DNA of 56,688 nucleotides, the filler included, from Dugesia japonica (Eukaryota): NCBI GenBank assembly GCA_001938525.1. It is 5 parts of 5 records of this genome, joined end to end, with 100 filler letters (N's around TTAATTAATTAA, not from the genome) between each part and the next. Parts side by side here need not be neighbours in the genome. Positions count along the whole stretch, not along the records: positions 33,333 to 45,231 come from MQRL01624362.1; 4 more parts are not named here. One strand, given 5' to 3'. Below, in pieces: positions 33,333 to 45,231 of the stretch (the first letter of the stretch is position 1; every line of letters starts with the position of its first letter). The notes under the pieces were generated by a model. It did not search any database. It saw only the letters and a list, made by a program, of their open reading frames with translations, and was not told the origin of the DNA. A program made the position numbers and the translations under genes.

Positions 33333-33689
33333 ATTTCAAATAATTATTTATGATATTAATATCGACGTTTCTCACACTCAAATGAAACCACCCCCTTTGC
33401 CAGATTTTTTTGTTTAACATAAACAAACCCTTCAAGTAGAAGTTTTTCTTTTCCTTTCTCGGACATAATATATTCCATAGTTTCAATTAATAATGATCTG
33501 AAAACAATAATTATATTAATTAATATTTAAAATTAGACTTACAAGTAAACTATTTAAAAGAAAAGAAATTTAAAACAAAAAACGATTTTGACAAGTTTTA
33601 TTTTAATTAATAATATTTAAAATATTTGAAATTAATTATAACTTGCTTATTAAATTTTGCTTATAAAATTTTTTTTCGGTTTTAATATC

Positions 33690-33968
33690 ATAAATAATTA
33701 TTTGAAATAATTATAACTTGGAATTGAAAAGAAAAAAATATTTTACTTTCCTCAAAATTTTAATTATTTGGTCATAAATAATCATTTGAAATAATTGTAA
33801 TTTGGAATTGAAAATAAATAATATAATTAAATAATTTTCCGGGCGATATTGTCCGGGAGGATATTGTCCTCGGGGGAAAAATATTTTACTCCTCAAAATT
33901 TTATAACTTGGAATTGAAAAGAAATAATATAATTAAATAATTTTCCAGGGGATATTGTCCTGATACNC
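33690..33968 (-). mobile_element. DNA-transposon end with GGACAATATCC subterminal repeats (MULE-like)
   Basis: Three gatattgtcc copies and three taacttggaattgaaaa-type blocks. It truncates the adjacent mariner at HIVT. Confidence 0.45.
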
Positions 33969-34580
33969 CTGTAACTATATGATACATAAACGACTTTCTT
34001 TGCTGTCTTTCAATGAAAATTTTGCTAATTGTTTCCCGTTTTTCCATCATTCTTTCATTCAATTCACGCGGAATCCATTTTATTTCAACCTGTATCTTTC
34101 CCATATGATGTAAACCAGAAGTCTCCAAACGTTTCAGCCCAAGGGTCGCATTAGCTATCAATCAACAGTTTGGGGGCCGACTACACACATTTTCTGTATA
34201 TAAAAATGTCTCCACGGTCCATACGAGAAGGTATTAACTACCAAACAGTAGTTTGGAAACCGCTGATGTAAATGATCACAAATGGTGTGTTGAAAAACTG
34301 ATTGTAACTGTTTAGCTAGTTGTTGTGTTTGAGTATTATATTCAGATAATATGACTTCCAATTCTGCATCTTCAAATTATTTAGGTTGATCTGGGCATTC
34401 TTTATCTTTTATATCAAAATCGCCATTTTTGAGTAGTTTTAACCACGTTTGCATGTGTCTTGAGATAGAACAAAGCTTTCATAATTAGACGATAGCTTTC
34501 AGNNNNNNNNNNNNNNNNNNNNNNNNNNNNNNNNNNNNNNNNNCGCAAATGCTCTTTTGTTGGCTCATATATTGACATTT
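33969..34580 (-). mobile_element. mariner transposase 5' relic
   Basis: WLKLLKNGDFDIKDKECPDQPK, TQ.QLAKQL, TICDHLH|HMGKIQ..KWIPRELNERMMEKR..I and FMYHIVT. Confidence 0.85.
34116..34265. mobile_element. 150-bp hAT MITE inside the mariner
   Basis: TIRs CAGAAGTCTCCAAAC and GTTTGGAAACCGCTG; TSD ATGTAAAC/ATGTAAAT. Removing it restores DHLH-HMGK. Confidence 0.88.
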
Positions 34581-35039
34581 TTAATGTCTAATAATATGAA
34601 AATTTCACTGTTACAAATTATTTCAATTGTGGATTTAATAAGCTTGATTATAAAAGTTCTAAAATTAATAAAAAAAAAACAAGAAATTAAATTAAAAATA
34701 TTGAAAAGAATTACTATTTCAACTTGTTCAAAATTTGTAATTCTGCGTGATTTAATGCATATTTTTGTCCCACCTAAATAAAAAAAAAATTCTTGATAAT
34801 TTTAAACTTAATCAATTTTAATGTTTTTTTTTATCAATTACGAAACAAAATGCTTTACATTTCCTCCATCAATACATAGTTTACTGGGTTTATTGACTTG
34901 TTTCAAATGATTTATTTTTTTCTACTACCTGTGATTTTTTCTCTATTCTACGTTGTAAAGAAATTATTGACTTTCCAGTGAGCGATTTATCTACTTCAAC
35001 TTTTCTTTTATAGTATCTCATTCTCCTTTTATCGATTGA

Positions 35040-35232
35040 TTTCAGAATACTTCATTTAGGGAAAGGAAATTTTCGGTTTTGAATCGTGCAAACCACTTAT
35101 AAACTGCGCTATCTGCAACGGCATTATCTCCGTAAACAGAACTGATCTTCCTTTTGTCTGTGAAACATTTTTATTTTATTTTCAGAATTAATATAACATC
35201 AAGTGCCTGGGATGTGTCTTTTTTCTTTCATT
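35040..35232 (-). mobile_element. mariner N-terminal (HTH) fragment
   Basis: KISSVYGDNAVADSAVYKWFARFK. Confidence 0.8.
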
Positions 35233-35409
35233 TTTTTTGATGATTATGTAATATTGAAATTGAAAATTAATATCAATAATAATTTCAAATGATGCAGTAA
35301 AATAAGATCTTTCAGAACCCGCTACATACTGTTGAACTGGCGATTTGAGTTTGAATACAATATCTGATGAAACGTACGAAGCAACCGCAAAAATTTAAAA
35401 TAACTGCAA

Positions 35410-35929
35410 GATATAGATAGATCGATATANNNNNNNNNNNNNNNNNNNNNNNNNNNNNNNNNNNNNNNNNNNNNNNNNNNNNNNNNNNNNNNNNNNNNNN
35501 NNNNNNNNNNNNNNNNNNNNNNNNNNNNNNNNNNNNNNNNNNNNNNNNNNNNNNNNNNNNNNNNNNNNNNNNNNNNNNNNNNNNNNNNNNNNNNNNNNNN
35601 NNNNNNNNNNNNNNNNNNNNNNNNNNNNNNNNNNNNNNNNNNNNNNNNNNNNNNNNNNNNNNNNNNNNNNNNNNNNNNNNNNNNNNNNNNNNNNNNNNNN
35701 NNNNNNNNNNNNNNNNNNNNNNNNNNNNNNNNNNNNNNNNNNNNNNNNNNNNNNNNNNNNNNNGATATAGATAGATCGATATAGATAGATCGATATAGAT
35801 AGATCGATATAGATAGATCGATATAGATAGATCGATATTGATAGATATAGATAGATATAGATAGATATAGATCGATATAGATAGATCGATATAGATAGAT
35901 CGATATAGATAGATCGATATAGATAGATC
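35410..35929. repeat. 14-bp tandem repeat (GATATAGATAGATC)n, partly gapped
   Basis: Directly visible at 35764-35929 and 35410-35429. Confidence 0.95.
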
Positions 35930-36089
35930 NNNNNNNNNNNNNNNNNNNNNNNNNNNNNNNNNNNNNNNNNNNNNNNNNNNNNNNNNNNNNNNNNNNNNNN
36001 NNNNNNNNNNNNNNNNNNNNNNNNNNNNNNNNNNNNNNNNNNNNNNNNNNNNNNNNNNNNNNNNNNNNNNNNNNNNNNNNNNNNNNNNN

Positions 36090-37057
36090 TGCACTGTGTA
36101 TAGTGAGAGTTTTGTCGATAATTCCACGTGTCGTAAGTGGTTGAGAAATGTTTGTATGAAAAATTATAATTTTATCGATGCACCATGTTCTTGACGACTA
36201 TTGATACTCATAGCGACTAAATATTAGTGAATATTGAGAGTGATCGCCATATAACAATTGAAGAGATTGGAGAAATATTTGGTATAACCATTCAACAGTG
36301 TCCAGACATTTACATAAACTTGAAATGACTACCAAAGCCAAAGAGATGCCACATCAATTAACGAAGAAATATTTCAAGACAATTTCTACTTGTTATTCTC
36401 CATTAAAGCGTAACCAAATCGATATTTTTTTAAAGCGAATGGTAACCGGAAATAAAAGATAGATGGAATATAATAACATTGTGTTAAAGATCATGGTGTA
36501 AGCCAGAAGATTTTCCATTAACCGTACCAAAGGTAGTTTACATCTAAGAAAGGCAGTGCTATGCATTTGGTGGGATTTCAAGGGAATAATTTATTATGAG
36601 GTTTTGTCCATAAACCAAACTTGTAATTCGAAGAAATACTGTTCACAACTAAGTAATTTAAAGGAAATAATCTACCAGAAGCGGGCTGAATTAACAAATA
36701 GAAAGGATATTTTGTTTCATTTAGATAATGCTAGACCACACGTGTCTTTGGCCACCGAAAAAACTTCTACAACCGGACTGTACTGTTTTTGTCCATCCAT
36801 CGTACTCACCAGGCCTGACATGACACAACTGTCATTTAGATCTCTTCAAAACCATTTACTTTTCTTGCTTGCAAGATTTGAAGTCACTTTAATCAGTTAT
36901 TCCACCAGTAACCTCATAGTTTCTTAGTGCGGCATTATGTAGCTACCAGATAGGTGAAGAAATGTCATCCAAAAAAATTGAAATGTAATTTATTTTAAAT
37001 AAAATTATTCTTTAATTTTTGTATAAAAAACGGGAATAACCATTGTACAGACCAAAT
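36090..37057 (+). mobile_element. mariner transposase relic with 3' end
   Basis: FLKRMVTGNK, LCIWWDFKGIIYYEVL...YCSQL..L and ILFHLDNARPH. TIR-like end aaaaaacgggaataac...ccaaata. Confidence 0.88.
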
Positions 37058-37229
37058 ATTTATGTTTTATTGCATTGATTAAAAAATTAGCACTGTGGAA
37101 TTTTAAAAATGGGAAATAGTGAAAGAAAAACTGCCAAGAAAAATTTTATATTAGTCAAATGAAGAGAAATTAAAAATCAAAAACTGACATCTTAAACGAC
37201 TGTATTGATAGAAAAACAGCTAAAAGACA

Positions 37230-37650
37230 ACAAGTAACTCAGTTGAAGTGTTTCAAAATAATTTAAAATCTAATTTATCTGAATAATCAGTAAAAAAACA
37301 TTTTAATGTTGATGAATCCGCTTTATTTTTTGAATCTCTACAGTAGGTGGAAGCATTCACACGAGAACAGTTGAAATTTTTGTTTTGACTTCTATGAAAT
37401 TTCATTAACTTTTTAATGACGTCTATGAAATTTTTTTTAAATTATTTTCCCATTGTTTTACATAGTATTTTAAAACTTTTTCGACTTCTTTGCAATTTCA
37501 TAAAATATTTAGTGATGTCTATGCAATTTCTATAATTTTTATGTAAAAGAAAAATTTTCAACTGTTCTCGTGTGAATGCTTCCACCTACTCTCTACCCTA
37601 ATAAAAGTTGTATATTTTCAAATGAAGAACCCTCGAATTACAAAAGGAAA
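37230..37650 (+). mobile_element. pogo/Tigger transposase relic, interrupted by 37342-37590
   Basis: FNVDESALFFESL before the insertion; PNKSCIFSNE after it (one-base shift). Confidence 0.6.
37342..37590. mobile_element. 249-bp MITE with 35-bp perfect TIRs, AGTAG...CTACT ends and 6-bp TSD (putative mini-Polinton)
   Basis: TIR AGTAGGTGGAAGCATTCACACGAGAACAGTTGAAA. TSD CTCTAC at 37336-37341 and 37591-37596. Confidence 0.92.
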
Positions 37651-37917
37651 GGGAAAAATTAAAACCATTACTAATAGGTAAAGTACTAGCGAAATTGTGG
37701 AAATGAATTTTCAAATGTTTATTAAAGTTTATTAAAAGAATTTNAAGAAAATATTAAATGTAAAGTCAAATTTTAAGAAATTTCAGCATTGATTTTCTGG
37801 AGAATTAAAAAAAATAAGTTCATTTAAATTAATTTGAATTTTAAATATGAAATAAAGTTTAATTTTATAATAAGATGAAATTTTTAGATAAAAAAATTGA
37901 TAGAATTAATAAAATTA

Positions 37918-38829
37918 AGAATCCATTTTTGCTTTTATTCAAAATATATAATCGAAAAATTTTTAATTAAAAATATATCGAAAAATTTTTAATTAAAAAT
38001 ATATAATCGAAAAAATTTTAATTGAAAATATATAATCGAAAAAATTTTAATTGAAAATATATCGAAAAATTTTTAATTAAAAATATATAATCGAAAAATT
38101 TTTAATTCAAAATATATATTTTTATAATTACAATTATTGTGAGAATAATTGTTGGACTTAACCATTGATCGCATTTGAGATTTCATTAAAATAAGAAAAA
38201 GCTTCGATCAAAAGCTTTTTCTTATTTTAATGAAATCCAAAATATATAATCGAAAAAGTTTTAATTGAAAATATATAATCGAAAAAGTTTTAATTGAAAA
38301 TATATAATCAAAAAAGTTTTAATTAAAAATATATCGAAAATTTTTTAATTAAAATATGTAATCGAAAAAGTTTTAATTAAAAATATATAATCGAAAAAGT
38401 TTTAATTGAAAATATATAATCGAAAAAGTTTTAATTGAAAATATATAATCGAAAAAGTTTTAATTGAAAATATATAATCGAAAAAATTTTAATTAAAAAT
38501 ACATAATCGAAAAAATTTTAATTCAAAATTTATAATCGAAAAAAGTTTATTTCAAAATATATAATCGAAAAATTTTTAATTAAAAATATATCGAAAAATT
38601 TTTAATTAAAAATATATCGAAAAATTTTTAATTAAAAATATATAATCGAAAACATTTTAATTGAAAATATATAATCGAAAAATTTTTAATGAAAAATATA
38701 TCAAAAATTTTTTAATAATCGAAAAATTTTTAATTAAAATATATAATCGAAAAATTTTTAATCCAGAATATAAATTTGTATTAAACGTTTTTCGATTCTA
38801 TATTTTGAATAAACGCAAAAATGGATTCT
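37918..38829. repeat. 29/26-bp tandem array enclosed by ~40-bp TIRs with AG...CT ends
   Basis: Unit AAAATATATAATCGAAAAAGTTTTAATTG. Left end AGAATCCATTTTTGCTTTTATTCAAAATATATAATCGAAAA; right end reverse complement AGAATCCATTTTTGCGTTTATTCAAAATATAGAATCGAAAA. Confidence 0.9.
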
Positions 38830-40779
38830 AAATTTTCAATTTTCTCTTTTTAAATATAAAAATATATTTTTAACGTAATAATTTAAATATTAAAAATAAT
38901 TTTAAATTAATAATTAAAAAAAAGAATTTTTTAAATAAAATTTTCAAAATTAAAACTGGATCTCAAATTGTTAGGCTTATTTAATTGTTTAAAATAACAA
39001 AAAGTTATATTTTTATTCTTATTATTTTGAATAAATATTAATGGATTCAAATATTCTTATATTCGACAGTGAATGTCGTAGATTCATATAAAATCAATGA
39101 ATGATTTAACATTATTTTAAAATGAAATAAAAATATTAATTAAAATCTATTTTTCTTTAAAAATATTTTGTATTAATTGATATTTCTATCAAAATCATTA
39201 TCATTTTATAATAAAAATTACTAGATTTGTTATTGTAAAAATGTCCATGTAAAAATTAAAGAATATTTTTGATTAATATAAATTTTATTTAATGAATATT
39301 TTTTATTTATTATGCAAGAAATATTGCAATTCAAATTTATTTTAAATTAATCAATTTTTAAATAAATTATTTATGTATAAAATTTATCACATAAAATGGC
39401 AAATTAAAAATCTTCTGTCTCGCTCATGATCTGTACATAAAAAACCATTCACTCTAACTTTCAGTTAGAAATAAATTTCAAAATATGCAAAAAATATGTT
39501 TTCTGATTTAATAAAATAAATGTGTCAAAAAGAGAATGATCTGACGATGGTTATCGTGTTAAATATTATATTTATTTATTCAATGACTTGAAATTTTATT
39601 TTTGAATAGTTNAATTATTTCGATTAAGTATTCAGTGTAACCTTTGTCTCAACAATCACATAATGTTATTGCTAATATGTGCTCACGTGTTGTATCCAAT
39701 ATATTTTATTGATTAATTGAAAGTATTGATCCAACTGATGAAATCCAGTCAGTTCAAATCAATATAAATATAATAAAATTTGTAGACATTATTATAAATA
39801 ATCAATATTTCTTTTTTGATTAAACTAATTAAAATTATGCGGATTGTTTTGTAATCAAACTATTAGAGCACATGTGTCAACGTGTTGTGTAACTTATTCA
39901 GCCAGACTAGTTATCTGTGAATCACCATCATATGGTTTGAGTCATCAAAATATTGAAACACTATTACATTTTAAGTCATTATTAAAAAAAGATTATTTAA
40001 CAGCACAAGCACTTAATTCTTTTACTTTAAAAATTAATTTATTAAAACAGTGTATTTTTTGAGGAAAAACGTTATGTTTTTATGTGGATTCTGACAAAGT
40101 TGATGCTAAAAGTGTTTAGTACTTTTAAATCGCGCTTCAGTTTTCATTTTTGTTCAGAAAATTTTCATAATTCATAAAGTTAAAATATAATTTCAATGAA
40201 TGTTGTATGTCGTTTCTAATCAATAAAATCTAACCACAATTTGTTATGCTACTCTAGATGATATAAATCTTTCTTAAATTTCAAAAATATTGAACAATCG
40301 ATATTATTCTTATTTTTAAAATGGAGTCTCAAAACCTTTTTCCAAGATTGAATAAACCCCACTTTGTTGTTTGTATTATTGAATGCAATTTCGAATACAA
40401 TTTTACGTCAACTTGTCTGTTACATTATAATCCTGCCATGATTTTTAATTAGCTCTTTTCAGTTTTTTATTTTAGTTCTATCGTATATGGGAATGTGCGG
40501 TATTTATATTTTATGGAATATTTTATTGCTTAATATCAAAATTGTAATTCGTAATGTCTTACAAGATTTTTCAAAATATTTAATCATTGAAAATAAAACA
40601 TTTATTTACACTTAATAAAACAAACAAAAAGTTAATTTATACATTGAACACCAGATATATTTTTGTGTTTTCGAGGTTAGAAATTAAAAATGTATTTTAG
40701 CAAAATACAACACAAAATTTTAACTAAAAATTTTCTTCTCACAATGTTTTTGCAATAAAAATTTGCATGTAATCATTAA

Positions 40780-41575
40780 ATGAACCACGAAAATCAGCTT
40801 TAATGTGTTGTATTTATAACGTCCATAAGTTCTTCTGGTGTTTTACAGTTTTGAGCTTATGGTCTTATAATGAAAAGGTTTCTTCGATTGTATTTGACTG
40901 TACGGAGGAAGAAATAATTATTCATGTCCAACACATTCAATCATTCTCATAACCGCTTCAATTTTTCCTCCTCCGCCAATCTTCCCATTATACTACGAAT
41001 AAACATTTAACACGTTGTTCCATTATAAACAGATGGCAAAATTTCAAAAATCAAAAATTAACTTCTCGAAATTGCTGTAGAGATTGGATCTGATTGACCA
41101 CATAATTTATTTGGAGATGTTCCTATCATACATGCGTCTCATGGTGCAATTTAATCTCATTTCATCAAGAAAAGTGATTCGGTCGCTGCTCAACTGTATA
41201 AATTCAAATGCTTAAAATTTTCTTTGTATATAGCAATTTCCATTTCAAACCTCTTGTATGAGCATAACTCTGTTAAATGATTATCAAAACCTTGGAAAAG
41301 CCACTTTCAATTTAAATTTATGTTCAAAACCTTCTAGCAATTCTTTCAAAGTTATTGAGACATTTGTCGATTTTTTAAAAATAAACATATTTTCCGGACG
41401 GATTGAAACTTAATCGCCGTAACATTGCCGGTCTTTTGATATTTTTGAACAACAGACGTGACATTTCTATTATTAACGTCAAGTTCTTCTGATATTTGTT
41501 TGGGTGCCTTTCCAATTTCGAATTCAGCACAAATTTTACTCTGATTTTGGTTGTTATTTGTATTCTTTTGACCAT
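40780..41575 (-). mobile_element. IS630/Tc1-like transposase relic
   Basis: RITFLDEMRLNCTMRRMYDR (first Asp), YNGTT..MFI and FLPPYS..NTIEETFS. Confidence 0.65.
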
Positions 41576-42069
41576 GCTAGAAATAGAGTTGTTATTATAT
41601 TATGATTATTTTAATTTAACAACCTTTCTTTGTTTGATTATGTATTATGTTATAACGATTAACTATTTTGTTTTAACGAGTAAATTTTTCGTTAAAATAA
41701 TTAAATATTTTGTTAAAACGATTGAATTCTTTATAACGATTATATATTTTGTTATAATGGTTAAATATCTGGAAAACCCCTTTTTTGAACAAGTACTTTT
41801 TGAATNNNNNNNNNNNNNNNNNNNNNNAAAAAAAAATAAAAGTTAATCGTGCAAGATTAGAAAAATTAAAAATTAAGTACTTTTTATAATGATATAAAGA
41901 GAAATTAATTTTATTTAAACTTTGGGGCTTGAATCATGTTTCGTTATATCGAGGATATCAAATTTTGTCCATTTTAAATTTTCCATTTATAAAAACGTAT
42001 TTGGGTTCTCAAATCTAAAAGGAAAAGCCCGTAGATTGATTGGACAAAAAGATAGATAATGATTGGTTA

Positions 42070-43016
42070 GTTTTAAGAACTTAAAAATATAAGAGTTAGT
42101 TTTAAATAAATGATGAGGTTTGAGAAGTCTATAAACAATAAAGATGAGAAATACACAACGACAGGTTCATCCAACCACATATAATTTTGAAATAAATTGT
42201 AAATCATATTTTGATCTATTTTCAGTGCCTCAGTCGTGGTGTTAAGTAAGTTGGATTTTTCTTTGATGTTACTCAATTGAATATTTGATGGATAAGTAGT
42301 TATCAATAAATAGCAGAATCTTTCTCCCGTTATCTTCCAATTATTTTATTCCTTTGTCTGAATCAGGCTTCGAGGATACTTAATGTCATCCAAGCCTTGC
42401 TGCTTGCTGTATATTTAACTAGTATTTTTCATTATCAGTCATGTTTGCACCGATTTTACTTCTTTTGTCACCAGTGCAACGATCGTTCTTAAATGCAAAG
42501 GTCCTATTTGGTAACAGTCTATAAAAGAGATCAGTCTCATGTGCATTAAATATATCCTCTTGTGGATATTGTTTAATGAGTTGCCACATTTTTAATTCTT
42601 TTATATTGATTTTTCTTGACTCTCCTTGATTTATTTTAAAGGTTTTAGTATATCTCCGTAACAAATTATCAAGCAACCCGTTACTTCCACGAAATTAATT
42701 TAAATTTAGTTCAATTGTGATTTCTTTTGCCTTTTCTTGAATAATTATCCGATAACTGGTAGATTCTGACTTACAGTTTGTCCAAAGCATATTAAAATAG
42801 CCCTTTCTAGATGCTTATATTGTTCATTCTTTATTTTATTACACTTTGGATCAATACCATTCTCAATTGCCTCTTAATCTAATAATTCCAGCAACCGTCA
42901 TTCTAAAAACTCTAAATCTTTCAGCCTACACAGTTCAGTTTGTATTTGTTCTCGCTGCTTCAATAATTTCTTTTTCTGATTTAATGTTAATTGACGCCTC
43001 TTTGATTTTGAAGGCC
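42070..43016 (-). mobile_element. pogo/Tigger (CENP-B-like) transposase relic
   Basis: QYPQEDIFNAHETDLFYRLLPNRTFAFKNDRCTGDKRSK..ANMTDNEK; SKAWMT downstream. Confidence 0.88.
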
Positions 43017-44108
43017 NNNNNNNNNNNNNNNNNNNNNNNNNNNNNNNNNNNNNNNNNNNNNNNNNNNNNNNNNNNNNNNNNNNNNNNNNNNNNNNNNNNN
43101 NNNNNNNNNNNNNNNNNNNNNNNNNNNNNNNNNNNNNNNNNNNNNNNNNNNNNNNNNNNNNNNNNNNNNNNNNNNNNNNNNNNNNNNNNNNNNNNNNNNN
43201 NNNNNNNNNNNNNNNNNNNNNNNNAAAATCAATGTAATTTATAATAATTAAAATTATTAAAATTAACCAATGAAAATTTAGTAAAAATAAATTAATTCAA
43301 AGAAAATTACTATCGTAAAATTAATTATTGAAGAAATCAAAAAAAATCAATTCCTGACGAGGACAAAGTCGAAAATTAGAATTATTATAAAAAAATTAAT
43401 TTGATCAAAGCTTTTATTTTAACTACCCTATGAAATAATTCAAAATTTCAAGGCAATTTAGAAATTATATTTATTGAATACGAGCAATTTTTGAATATTA
43501 AACATTGATCTATATTTTTTGTTTAATTAAAACAGGAATAAACTTCCAGTCTTAAATTTCGAGTACAAACTATAGATTTCAAGTACTAAAAACATTTATA
43601 CCTACTCTCTTAAATTTTTTTCTCTGCATAATTGAGTAAAGCAAAACTAATCTGAAGAAGTTGGAAAATTTCATTTTTTGACGAGGACAAAGTCGAAAAT
43701 TAGAATTATTATAAAAAAATTTTATTTTATCGAAGCTTTTATTTTAATGAAATCTCAAAAACGTCCAACAATTATTCTCGCAATAATTGTAATTGTAAAA
43801 TTAATATATTGGGATTGAATTTTTGATACGTGTCGTTATAACGAGGTAAGAATAAAAGAGTTTATTGAATCTATTTTTTAATCAAACCGTTGTTTAATCA
43901 AGGTGTCATTTCATTAGAATATTTTCGTAAGGTTTTATATTTCTTTTTACCAAAATTAACCGTCACTAAATCGAGTGTGTCCTTAAATCAAGGTTGGAAT
44001 TGAGTAAAGTGTGAAATCTAGAGATAAGATTTTGAAAATGAAATTAGAATTTCACTTAGTTTTTTTCATTTATTAAATACAATTAAAACATTTTTAATAA
44101 AATTTCAG

Positions 44109-44304
44109 CATTTTTGAAAGTGGAATCACATTAGGGAGAATTTTCGTTTTACTAATGTTCGGTTATCGATGGATTGTCCGGAGTCTATCTATAGCAACAG
44201 ATAATATTGCAACTGTCAATCCACTAACCACTATTATAAACTATTTAGTTAGATTTCTGTCAAGCGGATTTGTTCAAACATTTATAGTGAGCATGGGAGG
44301 ATGG
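44109..44304 (+). CDS. BAK-like BCL-2-family gene, BH1-BH2 exon
   Basis: IFESGITLGRIFVLLMFGYRWIV...FLSSGFVQTFIVSMGGW versus BAK LFESGINWGRVVALLGFGYRL...WIAQRGGW. AG at 44107-08; GT directly after GGW (44305-06). Confidence 0.88.
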
Positions 44305-44350
44305 GTACGTTATCGAATATTTAATTCTTTAATATCTTTTTCGTTTTAAG

Positions 44351-44446
44351 AGAGCAATAATGCATTCCCTCAGTACCACAGCCACCGTAATATTTGCCGC
44401 CTTAGCTGGTGTTTTTGTATTTCTCGCTATCGTTTTCCATAAATAA
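44351..44446 (+). CDS. BAK-like gene, last exon (C-terminal membrane anchor)
   Basis: After a 46-nt GT-AG intron: RAIMHSLSTTATVIFAALAGVFVFLAIVFHK*. Confidence 0.88.
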   Translation, partial: RAIMHSLSTTATVIFAALAGVFVFLAIVFHK

Positions 44447-45231
44447 ACCAACTTGATTTGATTGTGTTTTTTCTTAAATAATTTGTAATAAATTATGTAG
44501 TTAACATTTTATAAATATGTATGGATCATTTTTATATAGTTTTTCCTGCATTCTTATGCTGCGTACAGAATATTTAATAGTAAAAATTTTATATTTCATT
44601 ATTTGTTTGAAAGATGTATAATTTTTAAGTCAATCTATGCTTTCTGGTAAAATTGTTGAAAGCTATTTTTGTAATGATAAACAGAAAATACAAATTAATT
44701 TCTTTTTTATTATTAATTTCTTAATATAGGATTTCATAAGTAGTATACAAAATCTATCTATCTAAACAATGTTTCATCTGGGATGTGTTAAATCGGGCTG
44801 TAGCCAGAGGTGCATGCCGAGTTTTAAAAAATCGGGTGCCGGTTGATATTGATATGTGATTTTTCAATACCAAACAAAATTCTTTGTTTCGTGAAATCCA
44901 AGCCAACATATTGTAAAGATTTTCGGAATCGATTAAAAGGGCGGCTTTGTAAAAATCAAAGAATTAAGTGAAACTCTGTTTCTTTAAAACGGTCTATTTT
45001 TTCAAATGAAGAGTTTTTTAGATATACCTGACCCTCGTATAACGCTAATTACAATTTGCGGAAACCCTTTGTATAGAGCGGAGCTAAACCCTCGTATAAC
45101 GAGTTTTTTTTGAAATTCCAAATTTGTAGTATCCGGATATTTCCATATGTGTATAAAGAAATATAATAAAGAACTTCTTAAACCGACACATAATATTTAA
45201 TGTTTCTTTTCCACATTGTTTGCGTAATGAA

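What the first reader, a model, noticed from the sequence alone, without database searches (positions are those of the whole stretch)
37342..37590. Candidate non-autonomous 'mini-Polinton': 249-bp MITE with AG...CT ends and a perfect 6-bp TSD
Seen: 35-bp perfect TIRs beginning AGTAG, a CTCTAC duplication on both sides, no ORF, four degenerate internal subrepeats (GAC(T/G)TCTATG(A/C)AATTT), and insertion into a pogo relic. Established: Polintons/Mavericks have 5'-AG...CT-3' termini with short terminal reiterations used in protein priming and make 6-bp TSDs, whereas the other DNA transposons here make TA (Tc1/mariner/pogo) or 8-bp (hAT) TSDs. Inference: this is a tiny parasite mobilised by the Polinton integrase and/or pPolB, far shorter than a 15-20 kb autonomous element.
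Basis: partly seen in the sequence, partly recalled or inferred. Interest (0 to 1): 0.78.

Follow-up and report, generated by a model that had tools for sequence, protein, structure and literature searches.

The report
Tiny inverted-repeat transposon with Maverick-like ends
A 249-base non-coding mobile element sits inside a dead pogo-like transposase gene of an A+T-rich animal genome; its ends and its 6-base duplication look like those of the giant virus-like Maverick/Polinton elements, but with one copy and no partner element that link is not shown.

Summary
At 37342-37590 there is a 249-bp non-coding element. Its terminal inverted repeats are perfect for 35 nt (48 nt at 92%). A perfect 6-bp direct repeat (CTCTAC) flanks it, and four direct internal sub-repeats lie inside. 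It is the only long inverted repeat in the 11.9-kb piece. It interrupts a decayed pogo-like relic, and the two flanks overlap by exactly two codons when aligned to a second relic, so it is a real insertion.

The mini-Polinton reading is partly supported. Few known superfamilies make a 6-bp duplication. The ends, AGTAGG...CCTACT, match five of six positions of the commonest end motif published for vertebrate Mavericks. IS3EU/GingerRoot (TA..TA ends) and Ginger (TG..CA ends) do not fit.

Against it: there is only one copy. No Polinton-type gene lies in the piece. I found no further copy in any collection I could search, and no paper describing a Polinton derivative this small. A 7-bp reading of the duplication cannot be excluded.

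I left out the test that links the ends to a long partner element, because it could fetch a virus-like element of an animal.

Probability of Polinton-type ends or integrase is about 0.5. Probability of a family moved in trans is about 0.35.

The parts
37336..37341 (.). Left copy of the 6-bp target-site duplication (CTCTAC)
   Evidence: sequence. It directly abuts the outermost paired base of the inverted repeat.
37342..37590 (+). The element: 249 bp, 26% G+C, non-coding, ends AGTAGG...CCTACT
   Evidence: No Pfam family in its frames. No Rfam family or tRNA.
37342..37389 (+). Left terminal inverted repeat arm (outer 35 nt perfect; 48 nt at 92%, or about 46 nt with one 1-nt indel)
37543..37590 (-). 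Right terminal inverted repeat arm
37383..37433 (+). First 51-nt internal unit, holding sub-repeats at 37387-37402 and 37418-37433
   Evidence: (family D2)
37479..37529 (+). Second 51-nt internal unit (82% to the first, 96 bp downstream, same orientation), holding sub-repeats at 37483-37498 and 37514-37529
   Evidence: Excluding the arms, the interior shows no inverted symmetry.
37591..37596 (.). Right copy of the 6-bp target-site duplication (CTCTAC)
37083..37703 (+). Host sequence: decayed pogo-like transposase relic (outer bounds approximate; several stops and at least one frameshift), split by the element
   Evidence: translations of the two flanks, kept apart; the left flank aligns to residues 49-61 and the right flank to residues 60-78 of the second relic, so the 2-residue overlap equals the 6-bp repeat. 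Pfam gives no hit.

Best explanation
This is a short, non-coding DNA element bounded by terminal inverted repeats. It inserted into an already dead pogo-like transposase gene, and the staggered cut at the target was filled in to give a 6-bp duplication.

Shown: it is an insertion, it has TIRs, it has no coding capacity, and the duplication is 6 bp (possibly 7).

Inferred: the enzyme that joined it to the target was a retroviral-type (rve) integrase of a Polinton/Maverick element living in the same genome. That is the known family that combines a 6-bp duplication with ends of the AG(T)-repeat type. In this reading the element is a miniature non-autonomous relative that keeps only the ends the integrase recognises.

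More weakly inferred: the AG-T-AG reiteration at the tip and the strong panhandle the two arms can form would also let a protein-primed polymerase copy it, as in the published model for these elements.

Whether it belongs to a multi-copy family moved in trans, or is a single remnant deleted in place, is open.
For: - Insertion and duplication.
- A 6-bp duplication is characteristic of Polinton/Maverick and rare otherwise: PMC10045372, PMC8969392, PMC6839031.
- End motifs of vertebrate Mavericks are 5'-(AGT)2//(ACT)2-3' or (AG)3//(CT)3, with TIRs of 46-1447 bp: PMC8097293. The element has AGTAGG//CCTACT, 5 of 6 positions at each end.
- The other known 6-bp makers have different ends. IS3EU/GingerRoot has TA..TA, occasionally TG..CA, with 100-150-bp TIRs. 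Ginger has TG..CA.
- The single strand folds into a stem of more than 40 bp: -52.5 kcal/mol, z = -12.2. This matches the loop-out/panhandle step of the model summarised in PMC4046053, although any TIR element would do the same.
- Non-autonomous Polinton families exist by name: Polinton-1N1_DR (PMC9341505) and Polinton-N1A_NV (PMC11296320).
- The TIR shares nothing with the mariner or pogo relics around it.
- The 70 TIR bases and 12 duplication bases carry no mismatch, so the insertion is young relative to its decayed host relic.
Against: - Only one copy is known. None turned up in metagenome or prokaryote-genome contigs with two-ended patterns, in the protein word search of the longest internal frame, or elsewhere in the piece.
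- No rve, protein-primed polymerase, protease, packaging ATPase or capsid family among 55 open frames of the piece.
- The sixth base breaks the trinucleotide reiteration.
- The TIR is at or below the published lower bound.
- The published end motifs are from vertebrates, and this host (unidentified; its mariner is insect-like) may differ.
- Maverick genome size looks constrained to about 17 kb +/- 10%. That argues they spread as packaged genomes, which a 249-bp unit could not do.
- I found no paper describing a Polinton derivative of MITE size.
- The duplication could be 7 bp.
Confidence: 0.5

Rival explanations
1. Remnant deleted in place. A long element, of Polinton type or not, inserted here once and later lost its interior, leaving the two ends and about 150 bp. 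On this view it is not a family moved in trans, and 'MITE' is a misnomer.
For: Only one copy is known. The interior is an A+T-rich stretch with a local 96-bp-spaced duplication and no inverted symmetry, as subterminal non-coding DNA might be.
Against: The ends and the duplication are perfect while the interior would have lost many kilobases cleanly. No coding scrap is left inside. A size of 249 bp with a compact, repeat-structured interior is typical of MITEs (PMC8969392).
Confidence: 0.2
2. Non-autonomous element of a different superfamily, known or undescribed, whose transposase makes 6-8-bp duplications. Examples are an IS3EU/GingerRoot-like integrase-type transposon, a 7-8-bp family read one base off, or a family not yet described. 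The AG-T-AG start would then be coincidence.
For: The 7-bp (TCTCTAC) and 7-of-8 readings give the same empty site. GingerRoot shows 7- and 8-bp exceptions. Five matching end bases is little information. No Polinton gene is nearby.
Against: IS3EU/GingerRoot ends are TA..TA, or sometimes TG..CA, and their TIRs are 100-150 bp. The 8-bp reading needs a mutation in the duplication while 70 TIR bases stayed perfect. The 7-bp reading makes the TIR lopsided by one base. The TA duplications expected of the mariner and pogo relics seen in the piece do not fit (that TA rule is from my own knowledge of those families).
Confidence: 0.22
3. Not a mobile element: a local palindrome formed by inverted duplication or replication error, with chance flanking repeats.
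For: Only one copy is known. The region is rich in low-complexity repeats.
Against: The C-rich 6-mer repeat sits exactly at the last paired bases. The host relic resumes across the element with exactly two codons duplicated. The arms are 43% G+C in DNA that is about 25% G+C, and nothing comparable exists in the piece.
Confidence: 0.05

Closest known systems
Polinton/Maverick elements and their named non-autonomous families (for example Polinton-1N1_DR and Polinton-N1A_NV, seen by name only in PMC9341505 and PMC11296320)
   Same: 6-bp target-site duplication. Terminal inverted repeats. Ends of the AG(T)-reiteration type (5 of 6 positions of the commonest published vertebrate motif, PMC8097293).
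   Different: 249 bp against 12.7-24.6 kb for intact elements. No polymerase, integrase, capsid, protease or ATPase gene. TIRs at the lower published limit. The sixth end base differs. No sequence link to any long element has been shown, and I did not fetch or compare any such element.
Classical MITEs of cut-and-paste superfamilies (PMC8969392)
   Same: Size within 0.05-1 kb. Non-coding. TIRs. Flanking duplication. Insertion into other repeats.
   Different: The duplication is 6 bp, unlike the TA I would expect (own knowledge) from the mariner- and pogo-type transposases whose relics lie in this piece. The TIR shares nothing with the relics here. Copy number is unknown.
IS3EU/GingerRoot DNA transposons (PMC10045372, PMC6839031)
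   Same: 6-bp duplication. Integrase-related transposase chemistry would explain the stagger. Present in animals.
   Different: Their ends are TA..TA (sometimes TG..CA) and their TIRs are 100-150 bp. Here the ends are AG..CT and the TIRs are 35-48 nt.

Membership tests
Polinton/Maverick (as a non-autonomous derivative) | 6-bp target-site duplication | tested here: met
   A perfect CTCTAC lies on both sides. The flanks overlap by two codons on a paralogous relic. A 7-bp reading is not excluded with one copy.
Polinton/Maverick (as a non-autonomous derivative) | Terminal inverted repeats (46-1447 bp in intact vertebrate elements, PMC8097293) | tested here: met
   35 nt perfect, 48 nt at 92%. This is at the bottom of the range.
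Polinton/Maverick (as a non-autonomous derivative) | Reiterated end motif, 5'-(AGT)2//(ACT)2-3' or 5'-(AG)3//(CT)3-3' (PMC8097293) | tested here: inconclusive
   AGTAGG//CCTACT matches 5 of 6 positions at each end. AG recurs at positions 1-2 and 4-5, but the trinucleotide repeat is broken at position 6.
Polinton/Maverick (as a non-autonomous derivative) | Encodes a protein-primed family B polymerase and a retrovirus-like integrase ('by definition', PMC5499653) | tested here: not met
   No ORF inside, and no such Pfam family in the element or anywhere in the 11.9-kb piece. At most it is a dependant of such an element, not a Polinton itself.
Polinton/Maverick (as a non-autonomous derivative) | Terminal sequence shared with an autonomous element of the same genome | not tested
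   The source genome is not in the searchable collections.
MITE (generic) | Short (0.05-1 kb), non-coding, with TIRs and a flanking duplication (PMC8969392) | tested here: met
MITE (generic) | Many dispersed copies of the same structure | not testable with these tools
   One copy in the piece. None in metagenome or prokaryote-genome contigs. No eukaryote genome collection is on hand.
IS3EU/GingerRoot | 6-bp duplication | tested here: met
IS3EU/GingerRoot | TA..TA (occasionally TG..CA) termini and 100-150-bp TIRs (PMC10045372, PMC6839031) | tested here: not met
   The ends are AG..CT. Moving the ends two bases inward to TA..TA leaves no flanking direct repeat. The TIRs are 35-48 nt.
Tc1/mariner/pogo-derived MITE | TA duplication and TIR similarity to a Tc1/mariner/pogo element (the TA rule is my own knowledge of the family) | tested here: not met
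   No placement of the ends gives a TA duplication. The TIR has no match to the relics in the piece.
hAT-derived MITE | 8-bp duplication (my own knowledge of the family) | tested here: not met
   The best 8-bp reading is 7 of 8 and needs the ends moved one base inward.

The most novel reading that the evidence does not exclude
The element belongs to a multi-copy family of about 250 bp that keeps only the end signature of a Maverick/Polinton and is inserted in trans by that virus-like element's integrase, and perhaps copied by its protein-primed polymerase. It would be a MITE-sized parasite of an endogenous virus-like element. That would show that this machinery can act like an ordinary transposase on very small substrates, free of the roughly 17-kb size constraint.
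Probability: 0.35. Interest if true: 0.65.

Novelty: new member of a known kind. Interest (0 to 1): 0.42.

Why it matters
Mavericks/Polintons are debated as viruses versus transposons, and their intact copies have a tightly constrained size. A family of 249-bp dependants carrying only their end signature would be sequence-level evidence that their integrase works in trans on minimal ends. That would be a transposon-like trait. It would also give a compact definition of the end sequences the machinery needs. If the element is just a MITE of another 6-bp family, or a single deletion remnant, it is an ordinary piece of repeat annotation.

Tried and rejected
Searches for other copies
- Two two-ended patterns that can only match short copies found 0 in metagenome contigs and 0 in prokaryote genome contigs.
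- A word search with the 47-codon internal frame, hoping for spurious ORF calls on other copies, found no candidate.
- Low-stringency blastn and nhmmer within the piece found only a 15-nt match to the neighbouring 29-bp satellite, which I judge to be chance in low-complexity DNA.
- Full-text searches for strings of the TIR found nothing relevant; the one hit was an unrelated oligonucleotide.

Host identity
- The best mariner relative is 70% identical, and the two named hits (64% and 42% identical) are both from insects.
- Three window ORFs are not on record; one search used wrong coordinates and was repeated.
- The host stays 'an A+T-rich animal', based on a Bcl-2-family exon piece.

Other checks
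- Pfam could not confirm 'pogo' on the short stop-free pieces.
- DNA alignment of the flanks to the second relic was too diverged to use as an empty site. The protein-level comparison worked, weakly.
- Rfam and tRNA scans were empty.
- The original Polinton paper and two reviews are not held, so family features are cited from other papers.
- I rejected other placements of the ends: TA..TA ends, ends starting one to three bases inward, and a TA duplication. None leaves a flanking direct repeat.

Not counted as support
- The neighbouring 912-bp inverted-repeat unit is not counted, because its ends are ambiguous.

- The patterns typed into the DNA search and the paper search were copied from the window as the tools showed it.

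Full report
**1. What is there**

The piece 33333-45231 is A+T-rich DNA (10-36% G+C in 500-bp windows, N runs included). It consists mostly of dead transposons:
- mariner relics: Pfam Transposase_1 at 36502-36924 and the Mos1 HTH at 35045-35170;
- two pogo-like relics;
- a FLYWCH finger piece;
- satellite arrays;
- one exon-like piece of a Bcl-2-family gene at 44101-44346, which marks the host as an animal.

The element sits at 37342-37590.
- Its arms, 37342-37389 and 37543-37590, pair over 48 nt at 92%. The outer 35 nt are perfect.
- That 35-mer occurs nowhere else in the window, with 0 expected from shuffles.
- It is the only perfect inverted repeat longer than 15 nt in the piece.
- Pairing stops exactly at A37342 and T37590, and CTCTAC follows on both sides.
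- Inside there is no ORF of note.
- Four copies of a degenerate 16-mer all point the same way, with 0.09 expected. They are arranged as two 51-nt units, 82% alike and 96 bp apart.
- Apart from the arms, the interior has no inverted symmetry.
- No Rfam family or tRNA is present.

**2. Is it an insertion?**

I translated the two flanks separately and never joined them. They read as consecutive parts of a pogo-like transposase core. Pfam does not reach significance on these short, stop-ridden pieces, so 'pogo' rests on motif-level resemblance and on a comparison inside the piece.

In that comparison, the left flank aligns to residues 49-61 of the second pogo-like relic (42422-42694, minus strand). 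The right flank aligns to residues 60-78 (E-values are weak, 0.13 and 0.025). The two-residue overlap is the 6-bp repeat itself. So the host sequence was continuous, and six bases were duplicated when the element arrived.

The host relic is decayed, with several stops and at least one frameshift. The element's 70 TIR bases and 12 duplication bases carry no mismatch, so the insertion is the younger event.

**3. How long is the duplication?**

- The 6-bp reading is the only one that is both perfect and symmetric.
- A 7-bp reading borrows the element's last T and makes the TIR lopsided.
- An 8-bp reading is 7 of 8 and moves both ends inward.
- All three predict the same empty site, so only further copies can decide.

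**4. What family?**

- Vertebrate Mavericks carry conserved 6-bp end motifs, most often 5'-(AGT)2//(ACT)2-3', otherwise (AG)3//(CT)3. Their TIRs are 46-1447 bp. The reiteration is thought to serve the jumping-back step of protein-primed replication (PMC8097293).
- The element's AGTAGG//CCTACT matches five of six positions at each end and keeps AG at positions 1-2 and 4-5.
- IS3EU/GingerRoot also makes 6 bp, but its ends are TA..TA (sometimes TG..CA) and its TIRs are 100-150 bp.
- Ginger ends are TG..CA.

No placement of the ends gives a TA duplication, which is what I would expect (my own knowledge of those families) from the mariner and pogo transposases whose relics lie here. The TIR also has no similarity to those relics. 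On TSD length and end bases, therefore, the Polinton/Maverick signature is the best fit among the families I could check.

**5. What is missing**

By definition a Polinton encodes a protein-primed polymerase and an integrase (PMC5499653). This element encodes nothing, so at most it depends on one.

The link to a partner is untested:
- no Polinton-type Pfam family occurs among 55 open frames of the piece;
- no second copy was found by two-ended pattern scans, by a word search with the longest internal frame, or locally;
- the host genome could not be identified or reached.

Named non-autonomous Polinton families exist. I found no paper describing one of MITE size. The original description of the superfamily is not held.

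Intact Mavericks have a narrow size range. That fits spread as packaged genomes and argues against easy amplification of a 249-bp unit, unless the integrase acts in trans.

**6. Mechanism proposed**

- Shown: insertion with a 6-bp (or 7-bp) staggered target cut.
- Inferred: joining by an rve-type integrase that recognises the AG(T)-type ends.
- Weakly inferred: copying by a protein-primed polymerase. The published model has the TIRs pair on a single strand, as a loop-out and then a panhandle that acts as origin (PMC4046053). The element's single strand does fold into a stem of more than 40 bp (-52.5 kcal/mol, z = -12.2), but any TIR element would.
- The direct, paired sub-repeats could be protein-binding sites or just an internal duplication. 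Nothing here tells them apart.

**7. Rivals**

- A remnant of a long element, deleted in place (0.20).
- A dependant of another or undescribed 6-8-bp family (0.22).
- A non-mobile palindrome (0.05).

Against these, Polinton-type ends or integrase stands at about 0.5. Of that, about 0.35 is for a true family moved in trans.

**8. Steps left out, and a slip**

I did not scan any collection with a single end of the element. I did not scan the viral contig collection at all. I fetched no Polinton/Maverick as a comparator.

They were used nowhere.

**9. Verdict**

This is a new member of a known kind (a MITE-like non-autonomous element), of moderate interest.

Noticed in passing
window 37918-38829: A second unit bounded by inverted repeats lies 328 bp downstream. 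Its arms, 37918-37960 and 38787-38829, match at 40 of 43 positions and enclose the 29-bp satellite array. In the A+T-rich flanks its ends can be read two ways: as AG..CT with 5-of-6 matching 6-mers, or one base further in with a perfect 3-bp TAA repeat. I did not count it as support for the finding.
   Followed up: partly
window 37933-38772: Satellite array with a 29-bp period (84-bp higher-order unit), about 30 copies at 74-90% matches. Element bases 37470-37484 share an exact 15-mer with six of its units (38250-38463), which I judge to be chance in low-complexity DNA.
   Followed up: partly
window 44101-44346 (+): A stop-free 82-codon piece matching Pfam Bcl-2 (PF00452; E 1.4e-6; 29.2 bits, just under the gathering score of 31.4). 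It is probably one exon of a host apoptosis-regulator gene and marks the source as an animal.
   Followed up: partly
window 42076-42873 (-): A second, more diverged pogo-like transposase relic. Pfam is silent on it. I used it as the internal comparator for the flanks of the element.
   Followed up: partly
window 33904-34376 (-), 35045-35170 (-), 36502-36924 (+): Mariner-type relics. Pfam Transposase_1 and Mos1 HTH_48 support the last two. The best outside relative of the 36502-36924 piece is 70% identical, and the two named hits (64% and 42% identical) are from insects.
   Followed up: partly
window 33359-33526 (-) and 41355-41576 (-): A FLYWCH zinc-finger piece (E 2.8e-5) and a weak Tc1/Sleeping-Beauty-type HTH piece (E 0.003), probably further transposon debris.
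   Followed up: no
window 35764-35929: A 14-bp-period (GATA-rich) microsatellite-like array lying between two N runs.
   Followed up: no
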